Positions 25,468 to 64,000 are shown, counted from the first letter of the stretch. The stretch is 64,000 nt of DNA from Octopus sinensis (GCF_006345805.1 NC_043007.1:31868001-31932000); one strand, 5' to 3'. Program-made: numbers and translations. Notes: generated by a model not told the origin, from the letters alone.

Positions 25468-25540
25468 TCACCATTTGTAGTTAAACTTCAATCTAAGCAA
25501 ATATTTGATTTTCACTTGAGCAACATCGTACACGATATAT
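25468..25540 (-). CDS. PARP1: PARP1 terminal coding exon
   Basis: (E)[23 protein letters not shown]. Confidence 0.97.
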
Positions 25541-27854: not shown

Positions 27855-27897
<43 letters not shown>

Positions 27898-45800: not shown

Positions 45801-48800
45801 GGATGAAATGTGCAAAGTAGGACTATTCCAAGAAAAGACTATCAACACAGCCACTTCAAAATTACAAATTACAAAGTAATTATTTGCCTCTTCTGAACAA
45901 TTTCAATTACAAGATCTTTCATGTGAGAAATATGAAAATTAATGACATAACGAAACAGCCTACCTTTATTGCTAATGCAAGCAGCTAAGTTCTTATCGAT
46001 TGTGGTCACAATTTGACCTCCCATATTACTTATGTTCTGAGTAATCTGTTCTTCTGAAAAATCTAGGTTTCCAACAATAGCAAACTTCAATCCTTTCAAT
46101 GGTTTCGATGGCCTGGCAACAGAAGATAAACAGAAAATTTTGATTTTTGTAGACATTAAAAAAAAATAATTTCATTTTTGTATATATTTAACATTCATTT
46201 TCAATTCTATTACAGATGTCTCTTTAATTTTGACATTTGCAGGAAGTATAAATGTTAGTTAGTTAATTATTTGGCTCAAAAAGTAAAAAGCAAGGCCATG
46301 TAGGGGGACATGGAGTTATGTACAGGGAGGGTGTTCATGCAAAGAGTTCAGGCCACTTGTGGTCAAGTGAGACTTTGAACCGAGCGGTCGTCGGCATCTT
46401 CACTATCTCGTCCGGCAGCATATTCCACGGATCCACAACCCAGACGGAGAAAGCCCTTCTCCTTCGATTGAGATGAAATCGTCGCAGATAGAGCTTTATA
46501 TATAAATGAAATTTTATAACTAGATTCCCTTTTTTGACACTACTCACACAACTTCGAACTGAGTCACTGTAACATCTTCATTGCAACATCCACTTCTTCA
46601 GGCTTTATATAGGTCAGTTAGATTTTCTACAGCCAGATATATTACCTTACTTGAAAACTGAAGGTTGGTGACAGGAAGTGGTTCAGTTCCTTTCGAGTGT
46701 TGGGCCTCATGGAGGCAACGACCAAGATCTTTGGCATATATGAAGACACCTCAAACTAAGTAGAATTGTTGTCATCCATACATAGAGGCTTGTCGTTTAC
46801 AGGTGCCGATGCCACATAAAATACACTTGTGCTGCTGCTGCTGCAAAAACACGTTCATACAAGTGGCAGGTAAAAAGCACCCAGTGCACTCTTAAGTGGT
46901 TGGCATTAGGGAGAGCATCCAGCTGTAGAAACCATGCCACAATAGGCAGTTGGAGTTTAGACAGCTCCTGTCAAACCATCCAACCCATGCCAGCATGGAA
47001 AACAAACGTTAAGCAGTGATGATGATGATGATGCTGTGTGCTTGTGTATGACGGATTTAAGCTTTAAGTTATAACTTTGAAATAGGTAAACAAAAGCCAG
47101 TCTATAATTTACTTTACAAAAAGACATATTTCACATTATTTTACGATTGCTAGAATTTTTTTTTCTGTTACATTTAGAGATGTTGGTTTTATAGATACAA
47201 AGAATTAAATTATAATTTTGTAAAACTGCAAACAAAAATACCCCCCCACACACACACTGCATATACTAAAGAAAGAAGATCAAACAAAAAAAAAAATATC
47301 CAGAGATACTTACAGTCCATCCAGGACATCCACGGAACTTACAGGACCTTCCTTTGAAGATGCAGTTTCAGCAGCAAACACACGATCTCGCTTCTTGTAT
47401 TTATATTTCTTCCTGAAAGAAATAGTTTTCTTTTAAAAAAAATCCAAATGTGAATTTACATTTCTAGGCAAAATCACAGCTGTATGGTTAAGATGCTCGT
47501 TTTGCAACCAAACGGTTTTAAGGTTCAGTCCCACTACATGGCACCTTAGGCAAGTATTTTCTACTAAAGACCCAGACCAACCAAATGCTTTGCAAGTGAA
47601 TTTAATTTGGTAGAGGGAAACTGCATATGTATGTGTGTGTATTCCCTGTCCATCTTTGTATCATCTCTCTGTCCGAATGCTTTATCGTCATCTGTTGTGT
47701 TCTTGTTCCATTTTTTTTATTTATATATATATATAGCAGCGTATGTACACTCTTGCCTACCTTATGTGAGTATGTGTGTGTGTGTGTATGATGTATATAT
47801 ATATACACCACAACACACACACACACACACAGGTGTCTCTGTGGTGACTTGTACTACTATAAATAGCAGCCAAATCTCTCTTAAAACACACCTTTTTATC
47901 AAAAGATGGAAGATTTACAGTATTTCAAAAGGAATAGAAAAAACTATGCAACGGGTATGCTACATCAGAGGCAACTTTGGGCTAAACAAAACACAGACAA
48001 ACACATACTTCACATTAAAAGATTACCTCTAAATAATACCAATAAAGTTGACAGTATCTCTTCAAAATTTCATTCCCTGGTATTTTAAACATTTTCTCAC
48101 TGAGCTCTGAGACATAAAAAATTAACCGAGTTGCCTCCCTTAGCTAAAGGCCTCAGAATTGTGCAACCCAACCTCATTTTTTAGTGGTGCATTTTTAATA
48201 GACCCCAAAAAGATGGAAGGCAAAGTCCACTTCAGCAGGATCCATACACAGAATTCAAAGCCAAAAGAAATGATGCTAAGCATTTTGTCTGGCACTATAA
48301 CAATTCTGCTTGCTCACTACTTTTTATACTAAATAATAATAATAATAATAATGAAAATGATGATGATGAAGATGAGGATTTCAAAGTTTGGCACGAGGCC
48401 AGGAATTTCGAGGAAGGAGGTAAGTTGATTGCATTGACCCCCCCAACGCTCAACTGGTATTTATTTTATCAACCCCAAAAGGATGAGAAGCAAAGTCAAC
48501 CATGGCAGTATTTGAACGCAAAAGGAGATGGCAATTTTGAGAAGGACTGAGGGAGCAATGGTGAGAGAAATGTGTAGGGTGAAGCTGTTTGATAAGAGGA
48601 GGACTGAGGACTTGAAGGGAATTCTGGGGTTGGAGGAATCGATGGAATGGTTGGCAAGGGCGGATGGAGTGAGGTGGTATGGGCGTGTGTGGAGGACAGA
48701 TGAAGAGCATGTTCTGAAGAGGGTGATTGTATTTGAGGTAAATGGAGGGCAAAAGCAAAGTAGAACGGAGAAAAGGTGGAGGCAGAGATTGGGAGGGTTG

Positions 48801-51800
48801 GTTTGAAAAAGGAGGACACCTAAAGTTGGGTGAGATGGTGTGAGGACGGTTGCTATGGCATTGAGGCAGATCTGGCCAACCCCATTAATGGGGACAAAAA
48901 CCCGGATTTAAAACACTTTATGATGATGATGATGATTGTAAAGACTAATGAAATGCCACTCAACATTTTGCCTGACATGCTAACGATTCAGACAGCTCAC
49001 CACCTTAATAATAATAATAATAATAATAATAATGAAAATGATGATGATGAAGATGAGGATTTCAAAGTTTGGCACGAGGCCAGGAATTTCGAGGAAGGAG
49101 GTAAGTTGATTGCATTGACCCCCCCAACGCTCAACTGGTATTTATTTTATCAACCCCAAAAGGATGAGAAGCAAAGTCAACCATGGCAGTATTTGAACGC
49201 AAAAGGAGATGGCAATTTTGAGAAGGACTGAGGGAGCAATGGTGAGAGAAATGTGTAGGGTGAAGCTGTTTGATAAGAGGAGGACTGAGGACTTGAAGGG
49301 AATTCTGGGGTTGGAGGAATCGATGGAATGGTTGGCAAGGGCGGATGGAGTGAGGTGGTATGGGCGTGTGTGGAGGACAGATGAAGAGCATGTTCTGAAG
49401 AGGGTGATTGTATTTGAGGTAAATGGAGGGCAAAAGCAAAGTAGAACGGAGAAAAGGTGGAGGCAGAGATTGGGAGGGTTGGTTTGAAAAAGGAGGACAC
49501 CTAAAGTTGGGTGAGATGGTGTGAGGACGGTTGCTATGGCATTGAGGCAGATCTGGCCAACCCCATTAATGGGGACAAAAACCCGGATTTAAAACACTTT
49601 ATGATGATGATGATGATTGTAAAGACTAATGAAATGCCACTCAACATTTTGCCTGACATGCTAACGATTCAGACAGCTCACCACCTTAATAATAATAATA
49701 ATAATAATAACAAGCTTATTGTATACAGTGCTCAGGTGCACTACAACACGCATTTAGAAAAGACTGCAAAAGTAGTTACTAATTCCAACTTAGTACACAA
49801 AGAAATACTTAGCTATGCTTCTTAGTACAATACTAGTCACATACTCGCATAATTACAAATTTGTTAAATAACTGATTGAGCATACAATTCTGGTCTAAAA
49901 TACTCCAGATATGACCAAAAAGAAAGCAAAAAGGAATTAATTATAAACAAAACAGAACATAACAAAAACCAACTTACAAGACATCTGCATCATGATACTC
50001 CGATGGAATCTTGAATGCTTTACGTTTAGGTGTGCGTGTGACATAGAAACATTTCGTCCAACTTGTTATGTTTCCTGTACACCGGTAACCATCACTCCTA
50101 AAAGGGAAAAACAAAAGAATAAGGCTTAGGTTTTTTTTTGAAAGTTTATTTTTTTATTTCTCTTTTATACTCAGTAAATCTGAGCAGATAAGGCCGCCTC
50201 CCTAAGGTTTGAATTAATGCAGATTAACAAGTAAATGGAGATCCTTTCTATATAATCTTATTACTATAATGTCAACTTCCCTGTGTCTACATGGAGGTAC
50301 ATGGCTTAGCAGTTAGGGTGCTGGACTCACAACCATAAGATCGGGGTTTCAATTTGATAGTTTAAAAGTTTCAAATTAAGTTTTTAAAGCATCTTACGAT
50401 CGTTTCACAGAAGTGCTGTCCCTATAATGGAATCCTATATTGATAAGCATTTATAGACAACTCTTCTGCTCTTCAAGGATATAAAATGTGAAATTTGTAT
50501 AATTTATCGAATGGTAGTTTTTTTAAAAGTATGAAGTAATATGGGAAAATGGTGTTTGTTTGAAATATAAGTTAAGAATTAAAAATTACTGCTTTTGATT
50601 TTAGTATGAGTCTTTAAATCGATATATGCTTCCTTGGTAAGTCTTCTGTAGTAATCCATAATAGTTATGTGTAAAATCCATTATATTGTCTTGTATTCCA
50701 AATAGAGTTCATAGACTTAGATAATATAGAATAATGGAATCCTATATTGATAAGCATTTATAAATAATTCTTCTGCTCTTCAGTAATATCAAATGTGAAA
50801 TTTGTATAATTTAACGAATGGTAGTTTTTTTTAAAACTATGAAATTAAATGGGGAAATGGTGTTTGAAATATAAATTAAAAAGAGATAACTGAATGATTG
50901 TCCACAAATTTCCTCAAGCTTATTGAAGTTAACAATGAAAATTTTTCCGCTTATTTTAACATTAGCCTCTTGTGAATTAATGTGGAAACTGCCAAGCTTT
51001 TTTAAAATCATCCATATGAAAATTTTACATGTACAGATAAAAAAATATACGTTGAAAAAAAAAAATTTTAAGTATTAAAACTGGAACCAGTTAATCATAC
51101 TTGAATGTAAGTTTTCCTTCGGGACACTCCGGGCATTTTGCGAGGGCACCAAACGCCATACAGTCAGAAACAGAATCTAATAACTGAAGAAGAAGGGTCA
51201 AATTAAGATACTTTATTTCAAAGTAAAACTTTAAAATGATTACAGTACAAAGCATAAATGCATCCATCATACAGCTATTTAAGTTTTACCATTAAATTAA
51301 CCCATTGCCACTCCAAAGCATTTTCATAAGTTTGTCCTAAATGTCAATGTTTGTCTTGAGACTTTTAGTTTTTGGTTGATACATTCTTAGTAATATACAG
51401 TCAAGGCCAAAAGTTTGGAACAGTTTTTTTTTAATTTAAAATCATTATGCCTAAGTACAATTCAATTGAAATATATATTTGGGCACTTAATATAAAATTT
51501 CTTATTTTCAGACCCATGTTCCAAACTTTTGGCCACAACTGTAAAGCTTTTCTTTCATAAGTTCCAAGTTACTCTGGTGGATGAACAAAGATTTGGAATG
51601 TGTAATATATATGATGCATGGACACCAGAGAGCCATATCCTTGTATATCATGGCAAAGGGTTAAACACCAGATGAAAGCATACTTTAAACAGTTATTCCA
51701 AGAGAAAATAAAAACATTAAGAAAATTATGACAAAGCTATATTAAATTTTAGGGCCCTAAATTATTACAAGATTATGTAATGCTTCACTGTCTTGAGAAA

Positions 51801-54800
51801 AGGATTTAAACCAGCATATCTGGCCCAAATCTTCTCAAACCTACTTCATAATGTCATTCTAAAAATAAAACAATCGCATCATCAAAATCTCAAAGCTACG
51901 AGATAATCCTGTGATTAATTCAAGACAATGTGAATGAATGAACATTACATTTGACAAAGTAATCTGAAAGCCAAAGAGTTAAAGGAAGGAACTGTAAATG
52001 TGAAAAGGAACACTCACCTTACTCTCACCTGAGGGTATTGCCTGTTCGTTTAACTCCAACAAAACTTTCAGAGCTTCAACAGAGATTTCTTTCTCTAATT
52101 TATCCCGGAAGCCCCACAATAGTTTGTTTTGTACCTTGATGAGAACATAAAAATCATTAGTGACTGCTTCAATTAAATATTGTTTATTTCAAATATACAA
52201 TCTAACCAACTGCAAACATATGGAGATTAGTGAAATAATTAACTTCAATAATTAACAAAGTTTAACCCACTGACATTAAATATTCTCTATCGTGTAATAA
52301 TAATCCCTTCTGCTGTAGGCACAAGACTTGAAATTTTGAGGGAGTCAATTACCAGGGAGCCCCAGTGCTCAACTGGTATTTATTTTATCAACTCCAGAAA
52401 GATGAAAGGCAAAGCCAACTTTGGTGGGATTTGAACTCAAAACTAATGATTCTGCCAGCTTGCTGCATAATATCTATCATGTAACAATGAATTTTCTGTT
52501 GCAGTTTCAATTTATATTTGAATATCCAAATAGACGCAGCCTAAGGCGGTTGATGTTGAAAGGGTTAAACGTGTTACTGGCTAGCACTTAATACATTGCA
52601 CTATTAACAAAACTACTGAATTTAATGGCAAAATTTTTTTTAAATAACCTTGGGTCTTATATGCATTAATGCATTAAAAACATCATCATTTAACGTTTAT
52701 TTTCCATGCTGGCATGGGTTGGATGACTTGACAGAAGATAACCAGCTGAAGGGCTGATTCAAGGCTCCATGTCTGTTTTGGCGTGGTTTCTATGGCTGGA
52801 GGCCTTTGCCTTGCTAGAAGTAGAGTGCATCTAATATGCCTGTGCATCTTTATGCCATCAAGTACAGTAATTAATAAATAGAACGCAACCAAAGGGTTTC
52901 TTCAGAAAAGGAGATACATCGTAAACATGACAGAAAACTAAAGTAATATAAACATGTAAGGCGGCGAGCTGGCAGAAACGTTAGCACGCCAGGTGTAATG
53001 CTTAGCAGTATTTCGTCTGTCTTTACGTTCTGAGTTCAAATTCCGCCAAGGTCAACTTTGCCTTTCATCCTTTCAGGGTCGATGTAATCGACTTAATTCG
53101 TTTGTCAGTCCTTGTTTGTCACCTCTATGTTTAGCCCTTTGTGGGTAGTAAAGAAATAGGTATTTCGTCTGTTTTTACGTTCTGAGTTCAAATACCACCA
53201 AGGTCAACTTTGCCTTCCATCCTTTCAGAGTCGATAAATTAAGTACCAGTTGCATACTGGGGTCGATCTAATCAACTGGTCCCCTCCCCCAAAATTTCGA
53301 GCCTTGTGCCTAGAGAAGGAAAGAACATAAATATATAATAATTCTAAGCAATAGAACAATTACGATGGACTTGAACGACAATTAACAAAAGACAAGACAT
53401 TCAGCAGAACAAACAAATGCAACCAACTTTCATTTGTTTCTCTTCTTCTGTTTCTTTTTTGGGTTTTTTGGCTTCTGCTTTAGATTTGTCATCTTCCTTT
53501 CTCTTCCGGCTACAAATTAAAATTATGGATGACTAATTAAATTATTTCAAATACTTATACTTGTCTGGCAAAATTTCTTTAAAAAATTTCATGATTTTTT
53601 TGTGGGTTTTTTTTTCTGTAATTAAAATTTTAACTGAATGTCAAAGCATCTAATGTATTTATTTTCACATTTCTGCAAACATGGATGGTAACAGCTTCAT
53701 GCAAGCATCAAAAACAATATGTAGACCAGTGCTTCTCAAACTATCTGATGTGGCGTACTGGCAGTTTTTTTTTTCCCAAAATGCCAGGGACTGGTAATAT
53801 TTCTTAGTAATATTATTTTATACTGGAAACAATATATATAATGGGCACACAAAAAGCACCATTTGAGTGTGATCGTTACCAGCGTCACCTTACTGGCACC
53901 TGAACAAAACATTCAAGTGAGGTCGTTGCCAGTGCCACTGGACTGACTCCTGTGCAGGTGGCACGTAAAAAACACCATCTGAGCGTGGCAGTTGCCAGTA
54001 CCGCCTGACTAGCCCTCGTGCCAGTGGCACATAAAAGCACCCATTACACTCTCAGAGTGGTTGGCACTAGGAAGGGCATCCAGCTGTAGTCCTCAGTCAA
54101 ATCGTCCAACCCATGCTAGCATGGGAAGCGGACGTTAAATGATGATGATGATGAATATAATAAAAGTTGACAATTTTTTTTAACTTGTATTTATTTTGTA
54201 AACAAATACAATATTTTGTAAGAATTTTATATTTCTTTCTTTTCTGGAAACTCACCACGTACTGGCAGCTGATGGCTCACGGACCGATGCCGGTCCGTGG
54301 ACCACCACTTTGAGTAGCACTGACGTAGACTATTCTCAGGAGCAGCTTAGGACAGGGAAAACAAAAACAGAACAGAAAACCAACAATGTCTGTGAAGAAC
54401 CTTACCTACTGGTGCTGCTCCCTTTGCCCAATTTCTCCACCAATTCCTTCTGATCTTCCTTTTTCAGAGTTTTGTAACCAACAATGCTGAAAATAAGAAG
54501 GGGACACATTAGAGTTTAGTCAAGAAAACACCTTTTATTATCTGTCATTGGACTGTGGCCATGCTACAGCACCACCTTGAAAGATTTAGTCAAACAAATT
54601 GACTTTAAAATTTTATTTCTAAGTCTGGTACTTGTCTTGGAATCTTTTGCCAAACTAAGTTATAGGAATGTAAACAAACCAACACCAGTTGTCAAACGGT
54701 GGTGTCCACTTTTCCAGGCTTGCATGGGCCAGACATATGACTAGGTTCTTTCAGTTTCCGTCTACCAAAATCCACTCAACAGACATGGGTAGGCCTGGGG

Positions 54801-57800
54801 CTAGAGTAAAAGACACCTGCCCAAGTCGCCACACAGTGGGACAGAACCAGAAACCATGCAGTTGGGAAGCAAACTTCTTACCACGCAACCATGCCTGCCT
54901 TGATGTCGATGTTAAAACAGATGGAAAGATGAATAGTTCTAAATATTCGTTAGATATTCAGAGTAACAAATCCACAAAAGTATGGAATCAGACACCATGG
55001 CTCCTCTTCTACATACTCCATCTTGTAACTCACACTGACAAGCCATTCCACTTAACATTACTGAGCTTTATTATTACCTCCACCTTAGCAAAGGCAGAGG
55101 TATTGTTTTCAGTCATGTTTGTTTGTTTGTTTGTTTGTCCGTGGACAAGATATCTCAAGAACCACTGGATGGATTCAGATGAAACTTTCAGGGATATTTG
55201 GTCTCATGACTGGTACAAACTGATTACATTTTGGGATCAATTGGGTACTGCACAAGGATTCTGGATTATTTTTCCAGTTTTTATTTAATTTTTGAGAGCA
55301 GTCGGGTTCATTTTTAGTATTCTCATTTATGAGAGCAGTTGAGTTTATTTCAGATATTTTCATTTTAAAAATCATCTCCAGCTAATCATTGAGAGGATGT
55401 TGGTGTTGCCTTGGTGGAGGTTTGCGCTGACTGCTCTTGTTGACTTTGATATAAGGTGGGAAGTTGGCAGAATTGTTAGCACATCAGACAAAACGCATGG
55501 AAGCATATCTTCCAGCTCTTTACATCTCGAGTTCAAATTCCACCAAAGTCAATTTTGCTTTTCATCCTCTTGGGGTTGATAAATTATCTCCCTCCTCAAA
55601 AATTCTAAGCCTATAGTAGAAAGGATTATTATCATTATTATTAAAGTGGCAAGCTGGCAGAATCATTAGCATGGCAAACAAAATGCCAAGCAGCAGGTCT
55701 TCCAGTTCTTTACATTCTGAGTTCAAATTCCTCTGAGGGCGACTTTGCCTTTCATTCTTTTGCAGGCAATAAAATAAACTCCAGCTGAACTCTATGACCG
55801 ATGTAGTCGTCTTACCCCCTCCTCTCAAATTTGCTCGCCTAATATCAAAATTTGAAACCATTAATGACTTTATGATTAATACTCACTCATCAACACTCTT
55901 GTCTGCAAATTCCAGTTCATCACGGTTTTTAACAAAACAGTCAACATGGTACCAGGTGTCTTGTGGGCCATACATCTTTGCCCTTTCACTCGTAAAATCT
56001 TTCTTTGATAAGCGTAAAGCATCCTACAAGAACCATAAATTAACGCAAAAGAGGATAATTCAATTTGTTTGCAACAGGTGACTGCAGAGATTTTAACTTA
56101 CAAAAGAAAAAGAAAAAAAAAACTTGAACACACAACTAAAAATATGAAACAGAGTCAATAAGAGAAAGCATTGATGTGGTCACATGACCTGCTAGAAATA
56201 GTAGCTATGGTTTCCTCAAACTACATTTTATTTTAAAAACCAAAAAGGAAGGAAGGACACATTAGCTAATATAGTTACAGATGCATTAGCTGAAAATAAA
56301 CTGGGATGGGCAGAGTTAGAGTGGCTTAAACCTTTATCATTTAAACTAGCCGTACCCAGTCCAAATATTCTACCAGTTTTATGTTGCAACTAACCAGAGC
56401 TAAGCTCTCACACCTGCTCTGAGATGTTATTCCATAATGGTGATGGATTAACAGAATCATAGCAGGGCTGGCCATGTGATTTGGATGCCGGGTAACTGGT
56501 GCACAAAGATGGCCCTCTTCAGTAAGATCAAGACTGAAAATAGGCCTCATGGAAAACTTTATCGCGATCATCTCAAGCAGTCTCTCATTTTAGGTGGTGT
56601 CCCTCTCAAACATTTAGAGCCCCTGGACGTTAATCGGAATGCATAGGGGGTCCGTGTGTGATGTTGAAGTAGAGTGCTTTGAAACCAAACGCAGCAGACT
56701 GCATGAAGAGAGGAGACGTGGTCATCAACCCTCTGTGGATGTTGTTAAACCCTTTAGCATTCAAACCGGCCAAAATATTTAACTTGTTTCATATTGAAAC
56801 TGACCAGATCTCGCCTCTCACCTCAGCCCTACAATGTCATTCTAAAACTAAAAAAATCACATCACTGAAATCTCTATACTACAAGATAATGCAGGATTAA
56901 TTCAAACCATTTTAAATAAACAAACATCACATTTGACAGAATAATCTGAACACTAAGGGGTTAACCCTTTCATTACTGTATTTATTTTGAGATGCTCTGT
57001 GTTTCTTTTAATTACTTTAAATACAACAAAGAATTTAGTAAACTAACTTAGTTATCATTAAGCTATTGTTAGGAACATAAATTGTGACTAAGGTTTGGTG
57101 GAAGATTTTAATTCAAAACTTATGAAAACAAGACGTTTGTACTACAGAGTCAGAGATGGTTTCTGCCGGGTTGGTAACGAAAGGGTTAAGGTCACTTTGA
57201 GTGCCCTCCTGCCAAAGGATTTGCCCATCTCATATCAGTCTTGTCAGCTACATCTGCTCCTACGAGAAACAATGTTCTGGAGGGGGAGGAAGAGCAATGT
57301 CATGGATCGATACAGCCATCCCTTTTGATGCAAGCAGTATTTGATTCTGCTGTTCAAAAATACCAAACATTTATCCCAAAGACTTTATTTTTTCAATGTA
57401 AACCAAATTATTTACTTTATCGATTTTCTCTTCACAGCCTCGACACTTGCTCCGGTTTGATTTTGCATACTCGGCTTTGAAATCACTAACAGCAGGTCCG
57501 GAGCCACCAGCCGCAGCACTTTTCTCGTTAATTCCACCACTCCCACCTGCAAGAAAGAGAAAGAAATTAGCAAGAAGACATTATTTTATACTTATAATCA
57601 ACATCTAGGCGTAGGAGTGGCTGTGTGGTAAGTAGCTTGCTTGCCAACCACATGGTTCCGGGTTCAGTCCCACTGCGTGGCACCTTGGGCAAGTGTCTTC
57701 TACTATAGCCTCGGGCCGACCAAAGCCTTGTGAGTGGATTTGGTAGACGGAGGCTGAAAGAAGCCCATCGTATATATGTATATATATATATATATATATA

Positions 57801-60429
57801 TTTGTGTGTGTTTGTGGGTTCCCACAACATTGCTTGACAACCAATGCTGATGTGTTTACATCCCCGTAACCTAGCAGTACGGCAAAAGAGACTGATAGAA
57901 TAAGTACTAGGCTTACAAAGAATAACTCCTGGGGTCGATTTGCTCGACTAAAGGCGGTGTTCCAGCATGGCCACAGTTAAAATGACTGAAGCAAGTAAAA
58001 AGAAAAAAAAAGATCTGGACTTTGCTACCCCGAAACCAAGGACTCAAAGGGCCAGTAACCCATCTAGCATGCCATATAGGTGACTACGGTCCCCACATTC
58101 CCAGCGAATGGGATGCTGGTCAATCATAGGGTTGGCCATTTACAGCTGAATGTACTGAAGCGATGGGAAATGAAATGTTTAGCTCAGCAACACACTGCAC
58201 TGCCCGGTTCAGAAACTGAAACCACAATCTTGTGACCACGAGTGCAACACCCTGACTACCAGGTCACACACCTTTTTTTTCTTATACTTTACCCTTCAAA
58301 AAACAAACACATGTCTGTGTTATTGAGTTAGATATTAACAAAATAGTATGAAATCATTAGGCATTCAATCTCATCATCATCATCATTTAAAGGCAGCAAG
58401 CTGGCAGAATCGTTAGCATGCCAGGCAAAATGCTTAGCAGTATTTCGTCTGTCGCTAAGTTCTGAGTTCAAATTCTGCTGAGGTCGACTTTGCCTTTCAC
58501 CCTTTCGGGGTCAATAAATTAAGTACCAGTTACGCACTGGGGTCGATATAATGGACAATCCATTTGTTTGTCCCCTCTGTGTTTAGCCCCTTGTTGGGTA
58601 GTAAAGAAATAGGTATTTCACCTGTCTTTATGTTCGGAGTTCAAATTCCACTGAGGTTGACTTTGCCTTTCATCCTTTCGGGGATTGATAAATTAAGTAC
58701 CAGATGTGTAATGGGGTCGATCTAATCGACTGCTCCTCCTCCCAAAAAATTTCAGGCCTTGTGCCCAGAGTTGAAAAGAATATCATCATCATTTAATGTC
58801 CTTTTCCATGCTGGCATGAATTGGATGGTCTGGCAGCTGCCCAGGCCTCATGTCTATTTTGCAATGGTTTCTACGGCTGGATGCCCTTCCTTATGCCAAC
58901 CACTTTACAGAGTGTACTGAGTGCTCTTACACAGCACCAACATGAGCACTATTTACGTGGCACCAGCACGAGTGCATTTCATGTGGCACATTTTTTCTAG
59001 GTTTTAATTTTTCTTATCTTCAACCACCTCTGATATCATTGCAGGGGAGGGATCCTTGTTACCTAAGAGAGTTAAGAACAGGGGACACATTATCCTATTG
59101 TTGCCCAAAGAAAGCAAACTGGAGCTCCGTTGTCAGAGGAATGGATATTTTAAATATAAATAAAATTTATCTCCTTTTACTGGGGATGAGAACAATAAGG
59201 GCCCAATAACAACAAAATGAGATGATAGGGTACAGCTGTTTGGATGCTGAAAATTTGGTATGGAAGATTGGACATTCAGTCTGTTTTGGCAACAGCACCT
59301 TTTGGCGCAGAAGACAGACAGACAGACACATACATGCAGAAATATACACTTACACATAAAAAAAAGTGAAAAAGAGAGGAGGAGAGAAACAGAGATTACA
59401 ATTTACTATTCGTACCTGCTATTTTGTCTTTGATATTCTTTTGGTCTTCCCAACGTAACGAGTCAAAGTTGTGTATTTCTTGATGGTTAGAAACACGGGA
59501 TCTCTTCCAGAAGCAGGCAAAATGGAACCAGTTTGGCACCTACAGAAACCAATATAAAGAACATTTGTTTCAAAACTAAAATTCAAATTGGAAACTTTAA
59601 TTCTTTTTTTTTTTTTTTCAAGTGAAAAATTACTTTGACCTTTTAGTATCAACCTGTCCTTCACTCTACTCTACTCTGCTCAACGTGTTGCTCAGTCCAG
59701 GAATTGAAACCACAATCTTATGATCATGAGTCTAAAACCTTAACAACTAAGCCACACACTTCTACTCAGCATATGTCATCATCGTTTAACATCTATTTTC
59801 CATGCACTGGAACCCAACTCCTAATCACAACCACGTGATACCAAAGTGAACAACTTAACCAGTCACCCACACATCCAAGCCTTCATAACTATATATATTT
59901 ATCTTTCTACTGAATTTGCAACGAATTATAAAAAAATTAAAATTCTGTTGAGGAAAACGAAGTTTTTTTCATGAAAATACATATTCTTTTCTACTCTAGG
60001 CACAAGGTCCAAAATTTTTAGGGATGAGCCAGTCGATTAGATTGACCCCAATATGTAACTGGTACTTAATTTTATCAACCCCAAAAGGATGAAAGGCAAA
60101 GTCAACCTCGGCGGAATTTGAACTCAGAACATAAAGACAGAAGAAATACCTATTTCTTTACTACCCACAAGGGGCTAAACACAGAGAGGACAAACGGATT
60201 AAGTCGATTATATCAACCCCAGTGCATAACTGGTACTTAATTTATCGATCCCCAAAAGGATGAAAGGCAAAGTCGACCTCAGTGGAATTTGAACTCAGAA
60301 CGTAAAGACAGACGAAATACCGCTAAACATTTTGCCTGGGATACTAATGTTTCTGCTAACTCGCCGCCTTATGAAAATACATATTGACAAATAAAAATAT
60401 TAACTTACCTTTCCATCAAATACAGGTGA
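25468..60429 (-). CDS. PARP1: Poly(ADP-ribose) polymerase 1; 26 exons in window (2856 nt, 951 aa), first exon upstream of 64000
   Basis: All exons join in frame across GT-AG introns. Domains in order: Zn1, Zn2, NLS, Zn3, BRCT, WGR, helical domain, ART domain with HGS, GIYFA and YNEY catalytic motifs; TGA at 25468-25470. Confidence 0.98.
25541..26206 (-). other. U12-type (minor spliceosome) GT-AG intron, last intron of PARP1
   Basis: 5' site GTATCCTTC; branch site CACCTTAAC about 12 nt before the AG; no polypyrimidine tract. Confidence 0.9.
25625..25794. mobile_element. MITE with TIR TTTGATGGCATAAAAGACAC (second copy 28682-29082, interrupted by family A)
   Basis: Inverted termini GATGGCATAAAAGACAC / GTGTCTT..AT(A/G)CCATCAAA and shared internal sequence in both copies. 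Confidence 0.7.
26207..26321 (-). CDS. PARP1: PARP1 penultimate exon
   Basis: [38 protein letters not shown]+GA (first two bases of the catalytic Glu codon). Confidence 0.96.
26464..27280 (+). mobile_element. Tc1/mariner DD37D (maT-like) transposase relic with internal deletion
   Basis: [25 protein letters not shown]...[14 protein letters not shown]; 37 residues counted between the two Asp; stops and frameshifts present. Confidence 0.85.
27692..28098 (+). mobile_element. Family B SINE, full length
   Basis: Near-identical to 11024-11418. Confidence 0.9.
28260..28321 (-). CDS. PARP1: PARP1 exon (ART domain)
   Basis: [21 protein letters not shown]. Confidence 0.95.
29516..29643 (-). CDS. PARP1: PARP1 exon (ART domain, PARP signature Tyr)
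   Basis: [42 protein letters not shown]. Confidence 0.97.
30271..30377. repeat. Inverted repeat (arms of about 46 bp) made from a tRNA-like SINE head
   Basis: TTCAGCTCACTACCTGGAATTGAACTCGGAATCTTGGGGT versus ACCCCAAGATCCTGAGTTCAATTCCAGGCAGTGACCTGAA. Confidence 0.85.
30540..30935 (+). mobile_element. DD37D mariner 3' relic
   Basis: [18 protein letters not shown]...[20 protein letters not shown]. Confidence 0.85.
31168..31320 (-). CDS. PARP1: PARP1 exon (ART domain, catalytic His)
   Basis: [51 protein letters not shown]. Confidence 0.97.
32074..32172 (-). CDS. PARP1: PARP1 exon (ART domain)
   Basis: [33 protein letters not shown]. Confidence 0.96.
33899..34150. mobile_element. hAT-like MITE
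   Basis: TIRs CAGTGATTTCTCAA / TTGAGAAGGACTG; related copy at about 21470-21700; TSD not conserved. Confidence 0.7.
34167..34298 (-). CDS. PARP1: PARP1 exon (helical domain end)
   Basis: [44 protein letters not shown]. Confidence 0.97.
35070..35452 (+). mobile_element. Family A: 5'-truncated RTE 3' UTR copy (representative)
   Basis: About 25 related copies, approximate coordinates: 673-780(-), 6125-6295, 7740-7995, 12270-12530(-), 13220-13400, 14205-14352, 21962-22143, 25990-26145, 28705-28915(-), 33538-33810(-), 36125-36362, 40740-41045, 43262-43548, 46740-47032, 52680-52860(-), 53850-54153, 58785-58990(-). Shared 3' end CCAACCCATGCTAGCATGGAAAGCGGACGTTAAAC(GAT)n. Confidence 0.9.
35921..36043 (-). 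CDS. PARP1: PARP1 exon (helical domain)
   Basis: [41 protein letters not shown]. Confidence 0.96.
37455..37538 (-). CDS. PARP1: PARP1 exon (helical domain)
   Basis: [28 protein letters not shown]. Confidence 0.96.
38671..38796 (-). CDS. PARP1: PARP1 exon (helical domain)
   Basis: [42 protein letters not shown]. Confidence 0.96.
38880..39536. repeat. Minisatellite, about 10 units of about 66 bp, derived from the RTE 3' UTR
   Basis: Unit approx GGTTGATGCCAGTACCACCTGACTGGCTCCCATACCGGTGGCACGTAAAAAGCACCATTCGAGCGT. Confidence 0.93.
39872..40070 (-). CDS. PARP1: PARP1 exon (WGR)
   Basis: [21 protein letters not shown]...[17 protein letters not shown]. Confidence 0.97.
41194..41326 (-). CDS. PARP1: PARP1 exon (WGR)
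   Basis: [44 protein letters not shown]. Confidence 0.96.
41771..42032. repeat. Minisatellite, about 10 units of about 29 bp
   Basis: Unit approx CTAACCAATCAAATGTGACAGTTTAATAA. Confidence 0.92.
42870..42947 (-). CDS. PARP1: PARP1 exon (linker/WGR start)
   Basis: [26 protein letters not shown]. Confidence 0.95.
44273..44333 (-). CDS. PARP1: PARP1 exon (automodification linker)
   Basis: [20 protein letters not shown]+G; 61 nt supplies the phase 0-to-1 change needed between flanking exons. Confidence 0.85.
44730..44875 (-). CDS. PARP1: PARP1 exon (BRCT)
   Basis: [49 protein letters not shown]. Confidence 0.95.
45043..45817. repeat. Inverted repeat pair, 58-bp arms (45043-45100 and 45760-45817)
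   Basis: CTTTGCTCATTTCATCCATTAACTGCTGTCTGCGGAAGGACACATGTGGCAACTTCCA versus the reverse complement of the right arm. Confidence 0.8.
45964..46112 (-). CDS. PARP1: PARP1 exon (BRCT)
   Basis: [50 protein letters not shown]. Confidence 0.95.
46305..46520 (-). mobile_element. CR1/L2-like LINE 3' fragment
   Basis: [41 protein letters not shown], resembling the CR1 RT C-terminus. Confidence 0.75.
47314..47412 (-). CDS. PARP1: PARP1 exon (Zn3-BRCT linker)
   Basis: [33 protein letters not shown]. Confidence 0.92.
48332..49708. repeat. Tandem duplication with 681-bp period, bounded by (AAT)n tracts
   Basis: 48353-49006 and 49034-49687 appear identical by eye, and the ORF track repeats at +681. (AAT)7, (AAT)9 and (AAT)7 lie at the three junctions. 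Confidence 0.95.
48524..48935 (+). mobile_element. RTE LINE 3' fragment inserted in a family C SINE (duplicated at 49205-49616)
   Basis: [20 protein letters not shown]...VRWYGRVWR; (ATG)n tail; the SINE resumes afterwards. Confidence 0.85.
49978..50097 (-). CDS. PARP1: PARP1 exon (Zn3)
   Basis: [40 protein letters not shown]. Confidence 0.96.
50424..50880. repeat. Diverged direct repeat of about 155 bp, offset 307
   Basis: ATAATGGAATCCTATATTGATAAGCATTTATA...GAAATATAA at 50424 and 50731. Confidence 0.85.
51101..51183 (-). CDS. PARP1: PARP1 exon (Zn3)
   Basis: [27 protein letters not shown]. Confidence 0.96.
51398..51541. mobile_element. Tc1-like MITE with TA TSD
   Basis: TA|CAGTCAAGGCCAAAAGTTTGGAACA...TGTTCCAAACTTTTGGCCACAACTG|TA. 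Confidence 0.85.
52018..52134 (-). CDS. PARP1: PARP1 exon (Zn3/PADR1)
   Basis: [39 protein letters not shown]. Confidence 0.95.
52958..53325 (+). mobile_element. Family C tRNA-headed SINE, dimeric form
   Basis: Head GGCGGCGAGCTGGCAGAA..GAGTTCAAATTCC. Core GACTTTGCCTTTCATCCTTTC..GTCGATAAATTAAGTACCAG (recalled as Nin/Deu-like) is present twice. Confidence 0.85.
53428..53509 (-). CDS. PARP1: PARP1 exon (bipartite NLS)
   Basis: [28 protein letters not shown]; weak donor GTTGGT but phase fits. Confidence 0.9.
53727..54322. mobile_element. hAT-like MITE with 8-bp TSD, containing a family A insertion
   Basis: TIRs CAGTGCTTCTCAAA / TTTGAGTAGCACTG; TSD ATGTAGAC / ACGTAGAC (7/8 match, CpG decay). 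Confidence 0.85.
54406..54486 (-). CDS. PARP1: PARP1 exon (Zn2 end)
   Basis: [27 protein letters not shown]. Confidence 0.93.
   Translation of the reverse strand, partial: HCWLQNSEKGRSEGIGGEIGQREQHQ
55887..56023 (-). CDS. PARP1: PARP1 exon (Zn2)
   Basis: [45 protein letters not shown]. Confidence 0.95.
56340..56620 (-). mobile_element. Degenerate RTE-X-like LINE 3' fragment
   Basis: Peptide ..[29 protein letters not shown] resembles the RT C-terminus of the 61620-61920 fragment. Confidence 0.5.
57416..57546 (-). CDS. PARP1: PARP1 exon (linker, Zn2 start)
   Basis: [44 protein letters not shown]. Confidence 0.96.
57608..58003 (+). mobile_element. Family B SINE, full length
   Basis: Near-identical to 11024-11418. 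Older or partial copies at about 2833-3148(-), 17000-17360(-), 18242-18690, 22530-22875, 43070-43715(-), 54535-54900(-), 60627-60860(-), 62200-62510(-). Confidence 0.9.
59416..59539 (-). CDS. PARP1: PARP1 exon (Zn1)
   Basis: [41 protein letters not shown]. Confidence 0.96.
60409..60429 (-). CDS. PARP1: PARP1 21-nt microexon (Zn1)
   Basis: CTTTTCAG|TCACCTGTATTTGATGGAAAG|GTAAGT = SPVFDGK. Confidence 0.92.
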
Positions 60430-60460
60430 CTGAAAAGAGAAAAAAAGTGATATTGTCAAA

Positions 60461-60625
60461 GACCTGAATAATAATAATAGTAATAACAACAACATTGAAA
60501 AATACCTTAGGAATGAGAACCCAGGTTCAAATTTCCCCAAGACACCTGATGAAGGCTGGAGGGTATATCAGCCGAAACGTTAACAACAAACAAGATGAGG
60601 ACAAATATCCGTCAAATGTAAAGAA
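60461..60625 (+). mobile_element. 5'-truncated SINE/PLE-like element carrying the minimal hammerhead
   Basis: Starts GACCTGAATAATAATAA, the same string that follows the tRNA-like head at 30330-30386; contains the hammerhead core. Confidence 0.5.
60541..60581 (+). ncRNA. Penelope-type minimal hammerhead ribozyme core
   Basis: GACAC-CUGAUGA-A-GGCUG(GAGGGUAUAU)CAGCC-GAAAC-GUU. Intact core, 5-bp stem II, palindromic AACGUU stem III. The 3' strand of stem I is absent in this copy. Confidence 0.7.
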
Positions 60626-61619
60626 TGCGACTCTTACTCTTTTACTTGTTTCAGTTATTTGACTGTGGCCATGCTGGAGCACCACCTTTAGTCAAACAGA
60701 TCAACACCAGGAGTTATTCTTTGTAAGCTTTAGTACTTATTCTATTGGTTTCTTTTGCCAAACTGCTAGGTTTCGGGGACGTAAACACACCAACATCAAT
60801 TGTCAAGCAATGGTAGGGGGACAAACACAGACACACAAATACATATATATATATATATATAGTTGAAAAGTATCGTTATATGTACAAATAAACCACAAAT
60901 AATTACAGAAAATTGGAGGAGAAAAAGATGTTGAATCAAAATTAGATTTAGTACAAAATAGAATTCAATACATATGTTTGTTTCAAAGGACAATACGAAT
61001 ATGTAAGAAAAAAATTATAACCATAGTAATTATAATTAAATTTATGCATTGTCATTTTCATCAATGTGAGGAATTTTTTTAAGGACATCAAATGGGCTTC
61101 TTTTAGTTTCCATCTAACAAATCTACTCACAAAGCGTTGGTTGGCCCAAGGCTATAGAAGACACTTGCCCAAGGTGCCACACAGTAGGACTGAACCCGGA
61201 ACCATGTGGTTGCGAAGCAAACTTCTTACAATTATATTTTTTTTTATTATTTCTAGTGCTCCAGGAAGTGAACAAGATTGAAAACTTCAGACATTGGCAC
61301 TAATCACCAACCATAGTATTAACTGGTTTAATTCCATATGGAAGACATATCCCTCTTCATAAACCCATTAGTCTGTTCATCATTGCAGAGTGTCTTACTT
61401 CAGAACACATTTCTATCCAATTTGCTCATTTTAACACTTGCTACCAACCAACCAACCAACCTGAGACTACCCAAGTTCTTTAATACAAACCTTGTGCTTT
61501 AACTCTTTTGATATCAACCCACCTGAAACTGTCCCTGGTCCTATGACATAGATTTCTTGTTTTAAAAGCATTTAAATTAAAATTTACCATCAAAATGTCA
61601 TGTTCATTTATATTCCAAA

Positions 61620-61920
61620 TCATCATCATCATTGTTCGACCGTGGTCGAGACAATGGAATTTACCATGCTACGCCAGACTTCATGGTCCATCATGGCATT
61701 ATGGAGATCCTATTGCTGGATGCCTGTATCCCTGGAGATTACATCAGGGTAGGAGAGTGTGCACCCTCTGGTATTGCGAGTAGATGGCTTCCAGAGGAGA
61801 AGAGGAGAAATTATCTCGTTTTCAGCCCTACAACAATGTCCAGCAAACTGGACTCTCCTACCTTTCACAAGAGATGACACAGGTTCCAAATACCAGTTTA
61901 TAAATGACAAATTTTCCATT
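61620..61920 (-). mobile_element. RTE-X-like LINE 3' fragment
   Basis: LVKGRRVQFAGHCCRAENEIISPLLLWKPSTRNTRGCTLSYPDVISRDTG; (GAT)n tail at about 61620. Confidence 0.8.
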
Positions 61921-62544
61921 ATTTTTTAGACTCACCGAAAGCAGTATATTTCAAGAGAAATATGGCAACAAAAAAGTTAAATTGTTCAGAGAAACAATCC
62001 ACACCACAGAGAATGAGATTCACTATTCAGAGTTAGATAAGAATTTGAACAATTTATTTTCATTTCCACTGATTATAGCTTTCACATTTTAAGAGCTCTG
62101 CCTGCCTTTTGAACTAACATTATATTGCAAATAGCCTGGCCTCGAGGTAATGTCACCTGATGTTCCTTTAAAGAAGAATGTTAATCATAACGTGTACTGG
62201 AACTTGGACTACAGCCATGCTGGAGCACCCAGAGCTTTGATTTGTTTAATGAAAAAACAAATCAACTTCGGTACATATATTTTAAGTCCCCTTTGTGAAA
62301 CTGCAATGCTAAGCGAATGTAAACAACCAAACACCAAATGTCAATGTGGTGGGAGTGGGGGACAAGCACAAAGGCTTACACACACACACACACATCCACG
62401 CAGTTTCTGTCAACCTAATTCACTCACAAGACATTGGTCGGCCCAGAACAATAGAAGATGCCCAAGGTGTTGCCCAGTGGGATTGAACCTGAAACCACAT
62501 GGTTGCAATTAATATTCGTCACAGTGGCACTCTAATGCCACATT

Positions 62545-64000
62545 CATCATCATCGTTGTGTTTAACTGAGGACTGGCAAGCCAGGAGGCTGCACCAGGCT
62601 CCAATCTGATTTGGCAGTTTCTACAGCTGGATGCCCTTCCTAATGCCCACCATTCCAAGAGTGTAGTGGGTGGTTTTTACGTGCCACCAGCATGGGAGCC
62701 AGTCGGGCGGCTCTGGCATCGACCATGCTCAAACAGTACCTTGTAAGTGCCACCAGTATGGGTGCCAGTCAGGCAGCGCTGACACTGGCCATGACTATGG
62801 TTTCACTTGGTTCGATAGGTCTTCACAAGCACAGCACATTGCCCGATGATTGAAGGGTATTTTTAAAGGGGCCAGTTATGTAACACTGGCATCGGCCACA
62901 GCTACGAGCTCACTTGGTTTGCCAGGTCTTCTCAGTCACTTGTCATAGCCTCTGTAAGGCCCAATGTTTGAAGGTCATGCTTCACCACCTCATCTCATAG
63001 GTTCCCTCCACTGTTAGGGTGTGACACTTCTTCACACAGCTGCCCTTATCCATATGTAACACATGAACATATCAGTGCCGTACACCACATCTGATGCTTC
63101 TTATGTCCAACTTTTCTCTCAGGGCACTTGCGCTCTGTCGTGTATGCACACTGACTTTACACATCCAGCGAGGCATACTAGCTTCATTTCTTTCAAGCCT
63201 ACACATGCCCTCAGCAGTCACAGGTCCATGTTTCACTGCCATGTAGCATGGCTGTTCACACACAGGCATCATACAGTCGACCATTCATTCTGAGTGAGAA
63301 ACCCTTTGTTACCAGCAGAGTTAGGAGCTCTCTGAACTTTGCCCAGGCTATTCTTATTCTAGCAACTACGATCTCAGAGCATCTACCCCCACTACTGACT
63401 TAGTCACCTCGGTAATGGAAGCTATCAACTACTTCTAGTTTTTCCTCCTGGCATGTGATGGAATTTGTTATCTGTACAACTTTGGCGTCTATTGCATGTG
63501 TGCATCTACCACACATAAAAGCTCTTCTAACTTAACCTTCCTTTGGTATTGTTGCAGCTCTTATGTGTCCATAGCTTACACCGGGTACAGCTTATGGAGT
63601 TTCTACCGACGCCTTTTCTACAGATCGAGCAGTGGTTTTTACTAGGATGACTCTAAAGTCCTACAACTCTAGACCTTGCTTCCACACCTGAAACTTCTCT
63701 AGTTCTGATAGTGACTCTGCTATTAGAGCAAGGTCATCAACATAGAGGAGCTCCTGGGGCAGTCTGGCTTGAATTCCTCTGTTATTGCCTGGAGGACTAT
63801 GATGAATAAGAGGGGGCTGAGGACCAATCCTTGGTGAACCCTTACTTCTACCTGGAATTCTTCACTATACTTGTTGCCAACCCTCACCTTTCTGACAGCA
63901 TCCCTGTACATGGCTTGTACAGCTCTCACCAACCACTCATTTATCCCTAGTTTCTGCATTAACCACCAGATAAGGGATCGGAGCACCCTGTCAAAGGCTT
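62545..64000 (-). mobile_element. RTE LINE, RT core through 3' UTR and (GAT)n tail; source of family A
   Basis: RT peptides at 63723-63986 and 63072-63284 continue into the family A 3' UTR (GGCACGTAAAAA..CACCCACTACACTC..GGAAGGGCATCCAGCTGTAGAAAC). Confidence 0.9.

What the first reader, a model, noticed from the sequence alone, without database searches (positions are those of the whole stretch)
60409..60429. 21-nt symmetric microexon encodes exactly the Zn1 DNA-sensing and activation loop of PARP1
Seen: a phase 0-0 exon, SPVFDGK, with strong splice sites. Established: it corresponds to human S41-K47, where F44 stacks on DNA break ends and D45 contacts WGR R591 for allosteric activation. As I recall, vertebrates encode this segment within exon 2 together with the following VPHW. 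Inference: in-frame skipping would give a full-length PARP1 uncoupled from DNA-break activation, a potential tissue-specific (for example neural) splicing switch.
Basis: partly seen in the sequence, partly recalled or inferred. Interest (0 to 1): 0.7.

Follow-up and report, generated by a model that had tools for sequence, protein, structure and literature searches.

The report
Ancient constitutive PARP1 coding microexon
The 21-base exon is real and encodes the DNA-end-sensing loop of the octopus DNA-repair enzyme PARP1, but it is an ordinary, already annotated exon kept unchanged from corals to molluscs, and nothing found here suggests it is ever skipped.

Summary
Window 60429..60409 (minus strand) is a 21-nt, phase 0-0 exon, TCACCTGTATTTGATGGAAAG = SPVFDGK. 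It has a 16/17-pyrimidine tract plus CAG acceptor and a consensus AAG|GTAAGT donor. It is exon 2 of Octopus sinensis PARP1. Exon 1 lies outside the window, 8,755 nt upstream. Exon 3 starts at 59539.

The peptide aligns without gaps to human S41-K47, which holds the base-stacking residue F44 and the activation residue D45.

The exon is not an octopus peculiarity. The same 21-nt, phase 0-0 exon is present in abalone, oyster, a brachiopod, two annelids and a coral. It is fused to the next exon in a hemichordate, a teleost and a termite. It therefore most likely predates the cnidarian-bilaterian split.

The proposed splicing switch has no support:
- All octopus protein models include the exon, and the exact skipped isoform is absent from a 15-billion-protein collection.
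- At least 16 cDNA-like bivalve assemblies include it.
- The only two "skipped" proteins are genome-annotation models, and the Capitella one simply missed an intact microexon.
- Lineages that lost the intron made the segment constitutive.

Tissue-level junction counts could not be run, so rare skipping is not excluded.

Verdict: an ordinary constitutive microexon, of low interest.

The parts
60409..60429 (-). PARP1 coding exon 2: a 21-nt, phase 0-0 microexon encoding S41-P-V-F44-D45-G-K47, the Zn1 base-stacking/activation loop
   Evidence: Sequence. Exact spliced mapping of XP_029642816.1 (P0121) onto the identical O. sinensis locus. Unique pattern hit in the window. Gapless alignment to human PARP1.
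60430..60452 (-). 3' splice site of intron 1: polypyrimidine tract (16 of 17 pyrimidines at -20..-4) ending in ttcag
   Evidence: No TGC in the 60 nt upstream.
60401..60408 (-). 5' splice site of intron 2: AAG|gtaagtta, a full match to the MAG|GTRAGT consensus
59540..60408 (-). Intron 2 (869 nt). It carries an interspersed repeat at 59976-60371 that has up to 22 further copies in the window.
59416..59539 (-). PARP1 coding exon 3 (124 nt): V48-PNWFH53FAC56... up to the first base of the G89 codon. It holds the last two zinc ligands of Zn1.
60430..64000 (-). The 3' 3.6 kb of intron 1 (8,755 nt in all; exon 1 is beyond the window end). Contains interspersed repeats at 60631-60861 and 61092-61229, and a reverse-transcriptase-like ORF fragment, probably from a retroelement, at about 63400-63998.
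57416..57546 (-). PARP1 coding exon 4 (131 nt): the Zn1-Zn2 linker and the start of Zn2 (…[22 protein letters not shown])
25468..59539 (-). The rest of the PARP1 coding region (Zn2, Zn3/PADR1, BRCT, WGR, regulatory and catalytic domains), down to the stop codon
   Evidence: tblastn of P0002/P0121 against the window and L001; Pfam domains listed

Best explanation
This is exon 2 of the Octopus sinensis PARP1 gene, a constitutively included 21-nt coding microexon.

Shown:
- It encodes the seven residues S41-K47 of zinc finger 1. These include the base-stacking residue F44 and D45, which the review read describes as essential for inter-domain activation; the same review says WGR R591 contacts Zn1.
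- It is flanked by near-consensus splice sites.
- It has kept the same length, phase and position since before the cnidarian-bilaterian split.
- A hemichordate, a teleost and a termite lack the downstream intron, so there the segment is part of a larger exon.

Inferred:
- The exon is recognised through its strong polypyrimidine tract/CAG acceptor and its AAG|GTAAGT donor, and is spliced into essentially all PARP1 mRNAs.
- The match between the exon borders and the functional loop is a by-product of two old phase-0 introns, not a regulatory device.
For: 1. Gene model. Exact spliced mapping of the RefSeq protein gives exon 1 (120 nt), the microexon (21 nt), exon 3 (124 nt) and exon 4 (131 nt), all with GT-AG introns.
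2. Octopus annotations. All four N-terminally complete octopus protein models read contain SPVFDGK (two from O. bimaculoides, one each from O. sinensis and O. vulgaris). O. sinensis RefSeq lists the protein without an isoform tag. The exact skipped 984-aa isoform is not in the 15-billion-sequence collection.
3. Orthologous microexons with the same 21 nt and phase 0-0: Haliotis SPHFDGK, Crassostrea SPVFDGK, Lingula SPHFDGK, Owenia SAHFDGK, the coral Pocillopora SPHFDGK, and Capitella SHMFDGK, which is unannotated.
4. Splice sites. Every one of these has 14-16 pyrimidines out of 17 before a ttcag acceptor, and an AAG|GTA(A/G) donor.
5. Intron loss. The intron after K47 is absent in Ptychodera and the teleost Salarias and in Cryptotermes. 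Constitutive inclusion is evidently tolerated and sufficient.
6. Transcript-level data. Sixteen Logan contigs of about 3.1-3.9 kb encode the full protein of Magallana gigas (10), Mytilus and relatives (5) or Argopecten (1). They must be cDNA, since the Crassostrea gene spans 17.9 kb. All include the heptapeptide.
7. Conservation. Of 124 full-length-range PARP1 proteins, 115 match S..FDG. in the first 120 residues. Of the nine that do not, five carry substituted versions of the loop and two are N-terminally truncated models.
8. The remaining two of those nine skip it exactly (Capitella P0066, Batillaria P0022). Both are genome-annotation models. In Capitella an intact microexon sits in the annotated 'intron'.
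Against: No RNA-seq junction counts for octopus tissues could be obtained. The collections searched held no octopus transcript assemblies covering this region, so low-level or tissue-restricted skipping is not excluded. The exon is symmetric, so skipping would be in frame and would escape nonsense-mediated decay. It sits behind a long (8.8 kb) intron, and microexons are intrinsically prone to skipping. The Batillaria model lacking the heptapeptide could not be checked against its genome because the look-ups were exhausted.
Confidence: 0.82

Rival explanations
1. A regulated cassette microexon. In some tissue (for example neural) or state, exon 1 is spliced directly to exon 3. The product is a full-length PARP1 lacking the Zn1 base-stacking/activation loop. 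Such a protein would be poorly activated by DNA breaks and poorly retained at them.
For: Skipping is in frame. Loop deletions in mammalian PARP1 (p.43delM, p.43_45delMFD) give expressed, apparently full-length protein with impaired chromatin trapping, and D45A uncouples activation from DNA binding, so the product could be stable and functionally distinct. The exon has kept a length of exactly 21 nt for hundreds of millions of years.
Against: No skipped isoform appears in any octopus annotation or in the exact-sequence look-up. None appears among the at least 16 bivalve cDNA-like assemblies or among the other members of the 20 clusters read. The two skipped models are annotation products, and one is shown to be a missed microexon. 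The splice sites are near-consensus, and no UGC lies within 60 nt of the acceptor in octopus, abalone, Lingula or Owenia; by my own knowledge, UGC motifs are typical of SRRM4/eMIC-dependent neural microexons. At least three lineages fused the exon to its neighbour, removing any possibility of skipping.
Confidence: 0.1
2. The loop-less or Zn1-less state is produced by a different route. An alternative first exon inside intron 1 or 2 would be spliced to the exon-3 acceptor. This bypasses exon 1 and the microexon together and yields an N-terminally truncated PARP1 without a functional Zn1.
For: Such models exist in other molluscs, and each joins a short novel N-terminus exactly at the exon-3 boundary: Crassostrea virginica isoform X2 (MNPK|IPNWFH), Haliotis asinina isoform X2 (…LLFK|VPNWFH) and Patella caerulea KAK6179959 (MSHYFQ|VPNWFH).
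Against: No such model exists for the three Octopus species read. The only truncated O. vulgaris model starts later, in Zn2. These isoforms are computational predictions, and I could not inspect their transcript support. They do not concern the microexon as a cassette.
Confidence: 0.06
3. A chance ORF or pseudo-exon: the 21 nt are not really spliced into the mRNA.
For: None beyond the general difficulty of proving a 21-nt exon from DNA alone.
Against: Without these residues the conserved Zn1 loop would be missing from the protein. The same exon is found at the same place in six other species of four phyla. The pattern is unique in the window, with zero expected by chance. cDNA-like assemblies of bivalves contain the peptide.
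Confidence: 0.01

Closest known systems
Human/vertebrate PARP1 zinc finger 1 (zf-PARP, PF00645) base-stacking loop, residues S41-K47 (PDB 2n8a, 3od8/3oda, 4dqy, 4av1)
   Same: Gapless alignment with identical numbering. SPVFDGK against SPMFDGK, with F44, D45, G46 and K47 identical. The zinc ligands C21, C24, H53 and C56 are conserved in the octopus protein.
   Different: The gene structure differs. In the vertebrate sampled (a teleost) the seven codons are the start of a 163-nt exon 2, with no intron after K47. In octopus they form an exon of their own.
Orthologous PARP1 microexons of other lophotrochozoans and a coral (Haliotis, Crassostrea, Lingula, Owenia, Capitella, Pocillopora)
   Same: The same 21 nt length, phase 0-0, position (Q40|S41 ... 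K47|V/I48) and TTT GAT GGN AAG core. All have pyrimidine-rich acceptors and AAG|GTA(A/G) donors.
   Different: Only intron sizes differ (intron 1 is 8,755 nt in octopus against 163-1,722 nt elsewhere), along with residues 42-43 (PV, PH, AH, HM).
Neural, SRRM4/eMIC-dependent alternative microexons of bilaterians (Irimia et al. 2014, cited in PMC7042379; the rest from my own knowledge)
   Same: Size class (3-27/30 nt), symmetric length, and coding for a surface loop at a functional interface.
   Different: No evidence of an exclusion isoform. No UGC motif next to the acceptor in octopus. PARP1 is a housekeeping DNA-repair gene, and the exon was made obligatory in lineages that lost the intron.
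Engineered in-frame deletions of the same loop in mammalian PARP1 (p.43delM, p.43_45delMFD; Pettitt et al. 2018, PMC5945626)
   Same: They remove part of the same seven residues and show what a loop-less protein does: it is expressed, not trapped on chromatin, and confers PARP-inhibitor resistance.
   Different: These are laboratory or selected mutations, not splice products. They delete 1-3 residues, not all 7.

Membership tests
PARP1 Zn1 (zf-PARP) base-stacking / activation loop | Homologous position to human S41-K47 within a PARP-type zinc finger | tested here: met
   phmmer against PDB: gapless alignment of octopus residues 1-66 to human 1-66 (2n8a_A, E = 7.9e-41). Pfam PF00645 is listed on the gene product.
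PARP1 Zn1 (zf-PARP) base-stacking / activation loop | Conserved F44 (base stacking) and D45 (inter-domain contact), with zinc ligands C21, C24, H53 and C56 around them | tested here: met
   The octopus sequence ...STC21KAC24...SPVF44D45GKVPNWFH53FAC56. Residue roles are taken from PMC8150716. DNA binding and activation of the octopus protein were not assayed.
Coding microexon (30 nt or shorter) | A short exon bounded by canonical AG...GT splice sites, in frame with the flanking exons | tested here: met
   21 nt, cag|...|gtaagt, phase 0-0, established by exact spliced mapping
Coding microexon (30 nt or shorter) | Present in mature mRNA | tested here: inconclusive
   Present in the annotated proteins of three Octopus species and in cDNA-like assemblies of bivalve orthologues. 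No octopus RNA reads were available here.
Alternatively spliced (cassette) microexon / neural microexon programme | Both the inclusion and the exclusion isoform are observed | tested here: not met
   The exact skipped octopus isoform is absent from the collection. No exon1-exon3 product appears among the proteins or in the 20 clusters read, apart from two genome-annotation models. One of those is shown to be a missed microexon. Absence from protein databases is weak evidence.
Alternatively spliced (cassette) microexon / neural microexon programme | UGC-type intronic enhancer close to the 3' splice site (SRRM4/eMIC-dependent class; from my own knowledge) | tested here: not met
   No TGC in -60..-1 in octopus, Haliotis, Lingula or Owenia. 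Present at -29/-33 in Capitella, -32 in Pocillopora and -45 in Crassostrea.
Alternatively spliced (cassette) microexon / neural microexon programme | Tissue-dependent percent-spliced-in | not testable with these tools
   This needs RNA-seq junction counts from octopus tissues.
Ancient conserved intron-exon structure | The same intron positions and phases in distant phyla | tested here: met
   The Q40|S41 intron is present in all 10 species mapped. The K47|V48 intron is present in Mollusca (3), Brachiopoda, Annelida (2) and Cnidaria, and absent in Hemichordata, Teleostei and Isoptera.

The most novel reading that the evidence does not exclude
In octopus, and perhaps in lophotrochozoans and cnidarians generally, the 21-nt exon is skipped in particular cells or states. 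That would make a natural loop-less PARP1 that is not activated by, or trapped at, DNA breaks, acting as a built-in attenuator of PARP1 signalling. Deuterostomes and insects would then have given up this control when they lost the intron.
Probability: 0.07. Interest if true: 0.6.

Novelty: already known. Interest (0 to 1): 0.2.

Why it matters
As it stands, the finding matters little. The exon is part of the public gene models of three octopus species and behaves like a normal constitutive exon.

Two modest by-products are useful:
- This microexon is one of the oldest fixed features of the PARP1 gene. It is present in coral, annelids, a brachiopod and molluscs, and fused to its neighbour in a hemichordate, a teleost and a termite. 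It is therefore a clean marker of intron loss.
- Gene predictors drop it. The Capitella model, and probably the Batillaria model, encode a PARP1 without its DNA-sensing loop. This is an annotation error worth knowing about when PARP1 sequences are compared.

If regulated skipping were ever shown, it would be a natural on/off control of DNA-break sensing by PARP1. That would interest the DNA-repair and PARP-inhibitor fields.

Tried and rejected
- **Exon 1 in the window.** I searched 60430-64000 on the minus strand for it. It is not there. A 'GRASSCRNC' stretch at about 62600 resembled it, but a similar stretch at 58890 suggests it belongs to an interspersed repeat.
- **First spliced aligner.** It allowed 1-3-nt exons and gave nonsense chains. 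I rewrote it with a minimum exon of 12 nt and the fewest-exons criterion.
- **Octopus transcript fragments.** A search with the 132-aa N-terminus for short transcript-derived fragments, including skipped ones, found no octopus fragments. It found only exon-1-plus-intron read-throughs with N-termini close to the octopus one (P0185, P0187), which say nothing about splicing.
- **Failed look-ups.** The exact-sequence look-ups for Acropora (P0080) and Xenopus (P0112) failed. I used Pocillopora and the teleost instead.
- **Literature.** Searches for a PARP1 microexon or a Zn1 splice variant found nothing specific. The one plant paper holding both words mentions them separately.
- **Rfam.** A scan of 58500-64000 found no RNA family.
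- **AAG codon as evidence.** I considered using the invariant AAG codon for K47 as evidence of splicing constraint. I rejected this because the three species without the intron also use AAG.
- **Structure prediction.** Predicting the structure of a loop-less Zn1 was considered and not run. The published deletion mutants are better evidence, and the tool returns no coordinates from which loop-end distances could be measured.


Full report
**1. What is in the sequence**

On the minus strand the window reads ...cactttttttctcttttcag|TCA CCT GTA TTT GAT GGA AAG|gtaagtta... at 60429..60409, which is SPVFDGK. The acceptor has 16 pyrimidines in the 17 positions before CAG. The donor, AAG|GTAAGT, matches the full consensus. 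A degenerate pattern for 'AG + S-P-x-F-D-G-K + GT' occurs once in the 64-kb window and never in 100 shuffles.

Downstream on the same strand, 59539 opens the next coding exon (tag|[24 protein letters not shown]...), which ends at 59416 (CAG|gtacga). An exon at 57546-57416 follows, carrying the linker and the start of the second zinc finger.

**2. Which gene and organism**

A search with a crude concatenation of the exon-like ORFs found a 991-aa 'poly [ADP-ribose] polymerase 1' of Octopus at 99% identity. The cluster holds O. vulgaris, O. sinensis (XP_029642816.1) and O. bimaculoides proteins.

A 421-nt stretch around the microexon is identical to O. sinensis chromosome CM016869.1, and the window matches the O. 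sinensis protein where it differs from O. vulgaris (VQNK versus VQNN).

Exact spliced mapping of the RefSeq protein on that locus gives:
- exon 1: 120 nt of CDS, M1-Q40, donor CAG|gtgcgt
- intron 1: 8,755 nt
- the 21-nt microexon
- intron 2: 869 nt
- exon 3: 124 nt

Exon 1 therefore lies about 5.2 kb beyond the window end. The gene runs down to the stop codon at about 25468.

**3. The structural mapping is right**

The octopus N-terminus aligns without gaps to human PARP1 residues 1-66 (2n8a_A). SPVFDGK is therefore human S41-K47 (SPMFDGK), with F44, D45, G46 and K47 identical, and the zinc ligands sit at C21, C24, H53 and C56.

A structural review states three things (PMC8150716):
- F44 makes the base-stacking contact.
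- D45A abolishes inter-domain communication and PARylation without preventing DNA binding.
- WGR R591 contacts Zn1.

**4. The exon is old, not octopus-specific**

I fetched the genomic loci of PARP1 orthologues and mapped each protein onto its own DNA.

| Species | Group | Heptapeptide | State |
|---|---|---|---|
| Octopus sinensis | cephalopod mollusc | SPVFDGK | separate 21-nt exon |
| Haliotis rufescens | gastropod mollusc | SPHFDGK | separate 21-nt exon |
| Crassostrea virginica | bivalve mollusc | SPVFDGK | separate 21-nt exon |
| Lingula anatina | brachiopod | SPHFDGK | separate 21-nt exon |
| Owenia fusiformis | annelid | SAHFDGK | separate 21-nt exon |
| Capitella teleta | annelid | SHMFDGK | separate 21-nt exon, unannotated |
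| Pocillopora meandrina | coral | SPHFDGK | separate 21-nt exon |
| Ptychodera flava | hemichordate | SPHFDGK | fused to next exon |
| Salarias fasciatus | teleost | SPMFDGK | fused to next exon |
| Cryptotermes secundus | termite | SPVFDGK | fused to next exon |

In every species with the separate exon it is phase 0-0 and sits between Q40 and V/I48. Each has a ttcag acceptor behind a long pyrimidine tract and an AAG|GTA(A/G) donor. The Q40|S41 intron is present in all ten species.

The simplest reading is that both introns, and hence the microexon, existed in the cnidarian-bilaterian ancestor. Intron 2 was then lost at least twice. Pettitt et al. also place M43/F44 in exon two of mouse Parp1. 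The data reverse any suggestion that the octopus arrangement is special.

**5. Is it ever skipped?**

- **Octopus models.** All four N-terminally complete octopus protein models contain the heptapeptide. The O. sinensis RefSeq entry has no isoform label. The exact 984-aa skipped isoform is not among about 15 billion sequences.
- **Full-length PARP1s.** Of 124 proteins in the full-length size range, 115 match S..FDG. in the first 120 residues. Of the nine that do not, five carry substituted versions of the loop and two are N-terminally truncated models. Only two join ...MVQ/MIQ directly to VPNWFH.
- **The two exceptions.** They are Capitella teleta CAPTEDRAFT_223861 and Batillaria attramentaria BaRGS_00034057, both genome-annotation models. 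In Capitella the annotated 445-nt 'intron' contains ...ttctctctttcag|AGC CAC ATG TTT GAT GGC AAG|gtaagc, an intact microexon (SHMFDGK) that the predictor missed. Batillaria could not be checked.
- **Cluster members.** A 7-residue deletion would hide inside a 90% cluster, so I read the members of 20 clusters. None has the exon 1-exon 3 junction.
- **cDNA-like assemblies.** Sixteen Logan contigs of 3.1-3.9 kb encode the whole protein: 10 from the Magallana gigas cluster, 5 from Mytilus and relatives, and 1 from Argopecten. The oyster gene spans 17.9 kb, so these must be cDNA. All include the exon.
- **Octopus transcripts.** A search for short N-terminal fragments found no octopus transcript pieces at all. 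For octopus itself the evidence is therefore annotation only.

**6. Features expected of a regulated neural microexon**

By my own knowledge, SRRM4/eMIC-dependent microexons usually carry UGC motifs just upstream of the acceptor. There is no TGC within 60 nt in octopus, abalone, Lingula or Owenia. The splice sites are the strongest in this part of the gene; compare CAG|gtgcgt, CAG|gtacga and AAA|gtaaat for the neighbouring donors. Three lineages made inclusion obligatory by losing the intron. None of this proves constitutive splicing, but it all points that way.

**7. What a skipped form would do**

Skipping is in frame. CRISPR-selected in-frame deletions in the same loop of mouse and human PARP1 (p.43delM, p.43_45delMFD) give expressed, apparently full-length protein that is no longer trapped on chromatin and confers PARP-inhibitor resistance (PMC5945626). 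D45A uncouples activation from DNA binding. Whether removing all seven residues leaves Zn1 folded is unknown.

**8. Surroundings**

Interspersed repeats lie 37 nt downstream of the donor (59976-60371, up to 22 further copies in the window) and about 200 nt upstream of the acceptor (60631-60861), so the exon's immediate flanks are unique sequence. Intron 1 carries a reverse-transcriptase-like ORF fragment, probably from a retroelement, at about 63400-63998. No Rfam family is present in 58500-64000.

**9. Verdict**

The observation and the residue-level mapping are confirmed. The object is exon 2 of PARP1: an annotated, very ancient and, by all available evidence, constitutive microexon. The 'splicing switch' is an untested speculation that comparative and database evidence disfavours. 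I put it at about 0.1, and at about 0.07 for the broad version. Only RNA-seq junction counts from octopus tissues can settle it. Interest is low (0.2).

The small positive results are the dating of the microexon to the eumetazoan ancestor, its loss in a hemichordate, a teleost and a termite, and its omission from some automated gene models.

Noticed in passing
Related proteins P0238 (Crassostrea virginica isoform X2), P0241 (Haliotis asinina isoform X2) and P0246 (Patella caerulea): Three mollusc PARP1 models replace exon 1 and the microexon with a short alternative N-terminus joined exactly at the exon-3 acceptor (MNPK|IPNWFH...LLFK|VPNWFH, MSHYFQ|VPNWFH). These would be Zn1-less PARP1 made from an internal start. 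They may be real or predicted only.
   Followed up: partly
L009:983-1003 (Capitella teleta KB309695.1); protein P0066; also P0022 (Batillaria): The published Capitella PARP1 model lacks the DNA-sensing heptapeptide because the 21-nt microexon (SHMFDGK, followed by a 53-nt intron) was not annotated. The Batillaria model shows the same gap and was not checked.
   Followed up: partly
Protein P0001 (Bulinus truncatus, 1175 aa): This model carries a second partial PARP1 N-terminus appended after the catalytic domain, beginning exactly at VPNWFH, the exon-3 boundary. It looks like a tandem partial duplication or an assembly or annotation join.
   Followed up: no
window 48464-49588 (minus-strand ORFs 49588-49145 and 48907-48464): Two identical 148-aa ORF-bearing copies lie 681 nt apart, a perfect tandem duplication inside a PARP1 intron, in a stretch with strong GC and AT skew.
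   Followed up: no
window 63400-63998, minus strand: A reverse-transcriptase-like ORF fragment (…GLVLSPLLFIIVLQAITEEF…), followed by zinc-finger-like and further ORF pieces, probably from a retroelement, inside PARP1 intron 1. It was named from the look of the peptide; no domain search was run.
   Followed up: no
window 59976-60371, 60631-60861, 61092-61229: Short interspersed repeats with 10-22 further copies in the window bracket the microexon. Many copies translate to a recurring '...[10 protein letters not shown]...' motif.
   Followed up: partly
Proteins P0187 (ENA contig of 19.6 kb) and P0185 (Logan): These are exon-1-plus-intron read-through ORFs whose N-termini are very close to the octopus one ([24 protein letters not shown]...). 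They may be other cephalopods in metagenome or sequencing-run assemblies and could serve for a cephalopod-wide comparison.
   Followed up: no
Protein P0207 (ENA, 12 members) and P0182 (ENA contig of 98.6 kb): Both are unspliced ORF calls on eukaryotic contigs in metagenomes. P0207 is coral-like and reads exon 1, an in-frame intron, SPHFDGK, and then intron sequence, which independently shows the intron after K47. In P0182 exon 1 and SPNFDGK are contiguous but are followed by 'VS' (gtaagt), which suggests a lineage that lost intron 1 and kept intron 2.
   Followed up: no
window about 16375 and below, minus strand (L001:62930 onward): A LIN52-domain gene lies about 9 kb downstream of the PARP1 stop codon on the same strand.
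   Followed up: no
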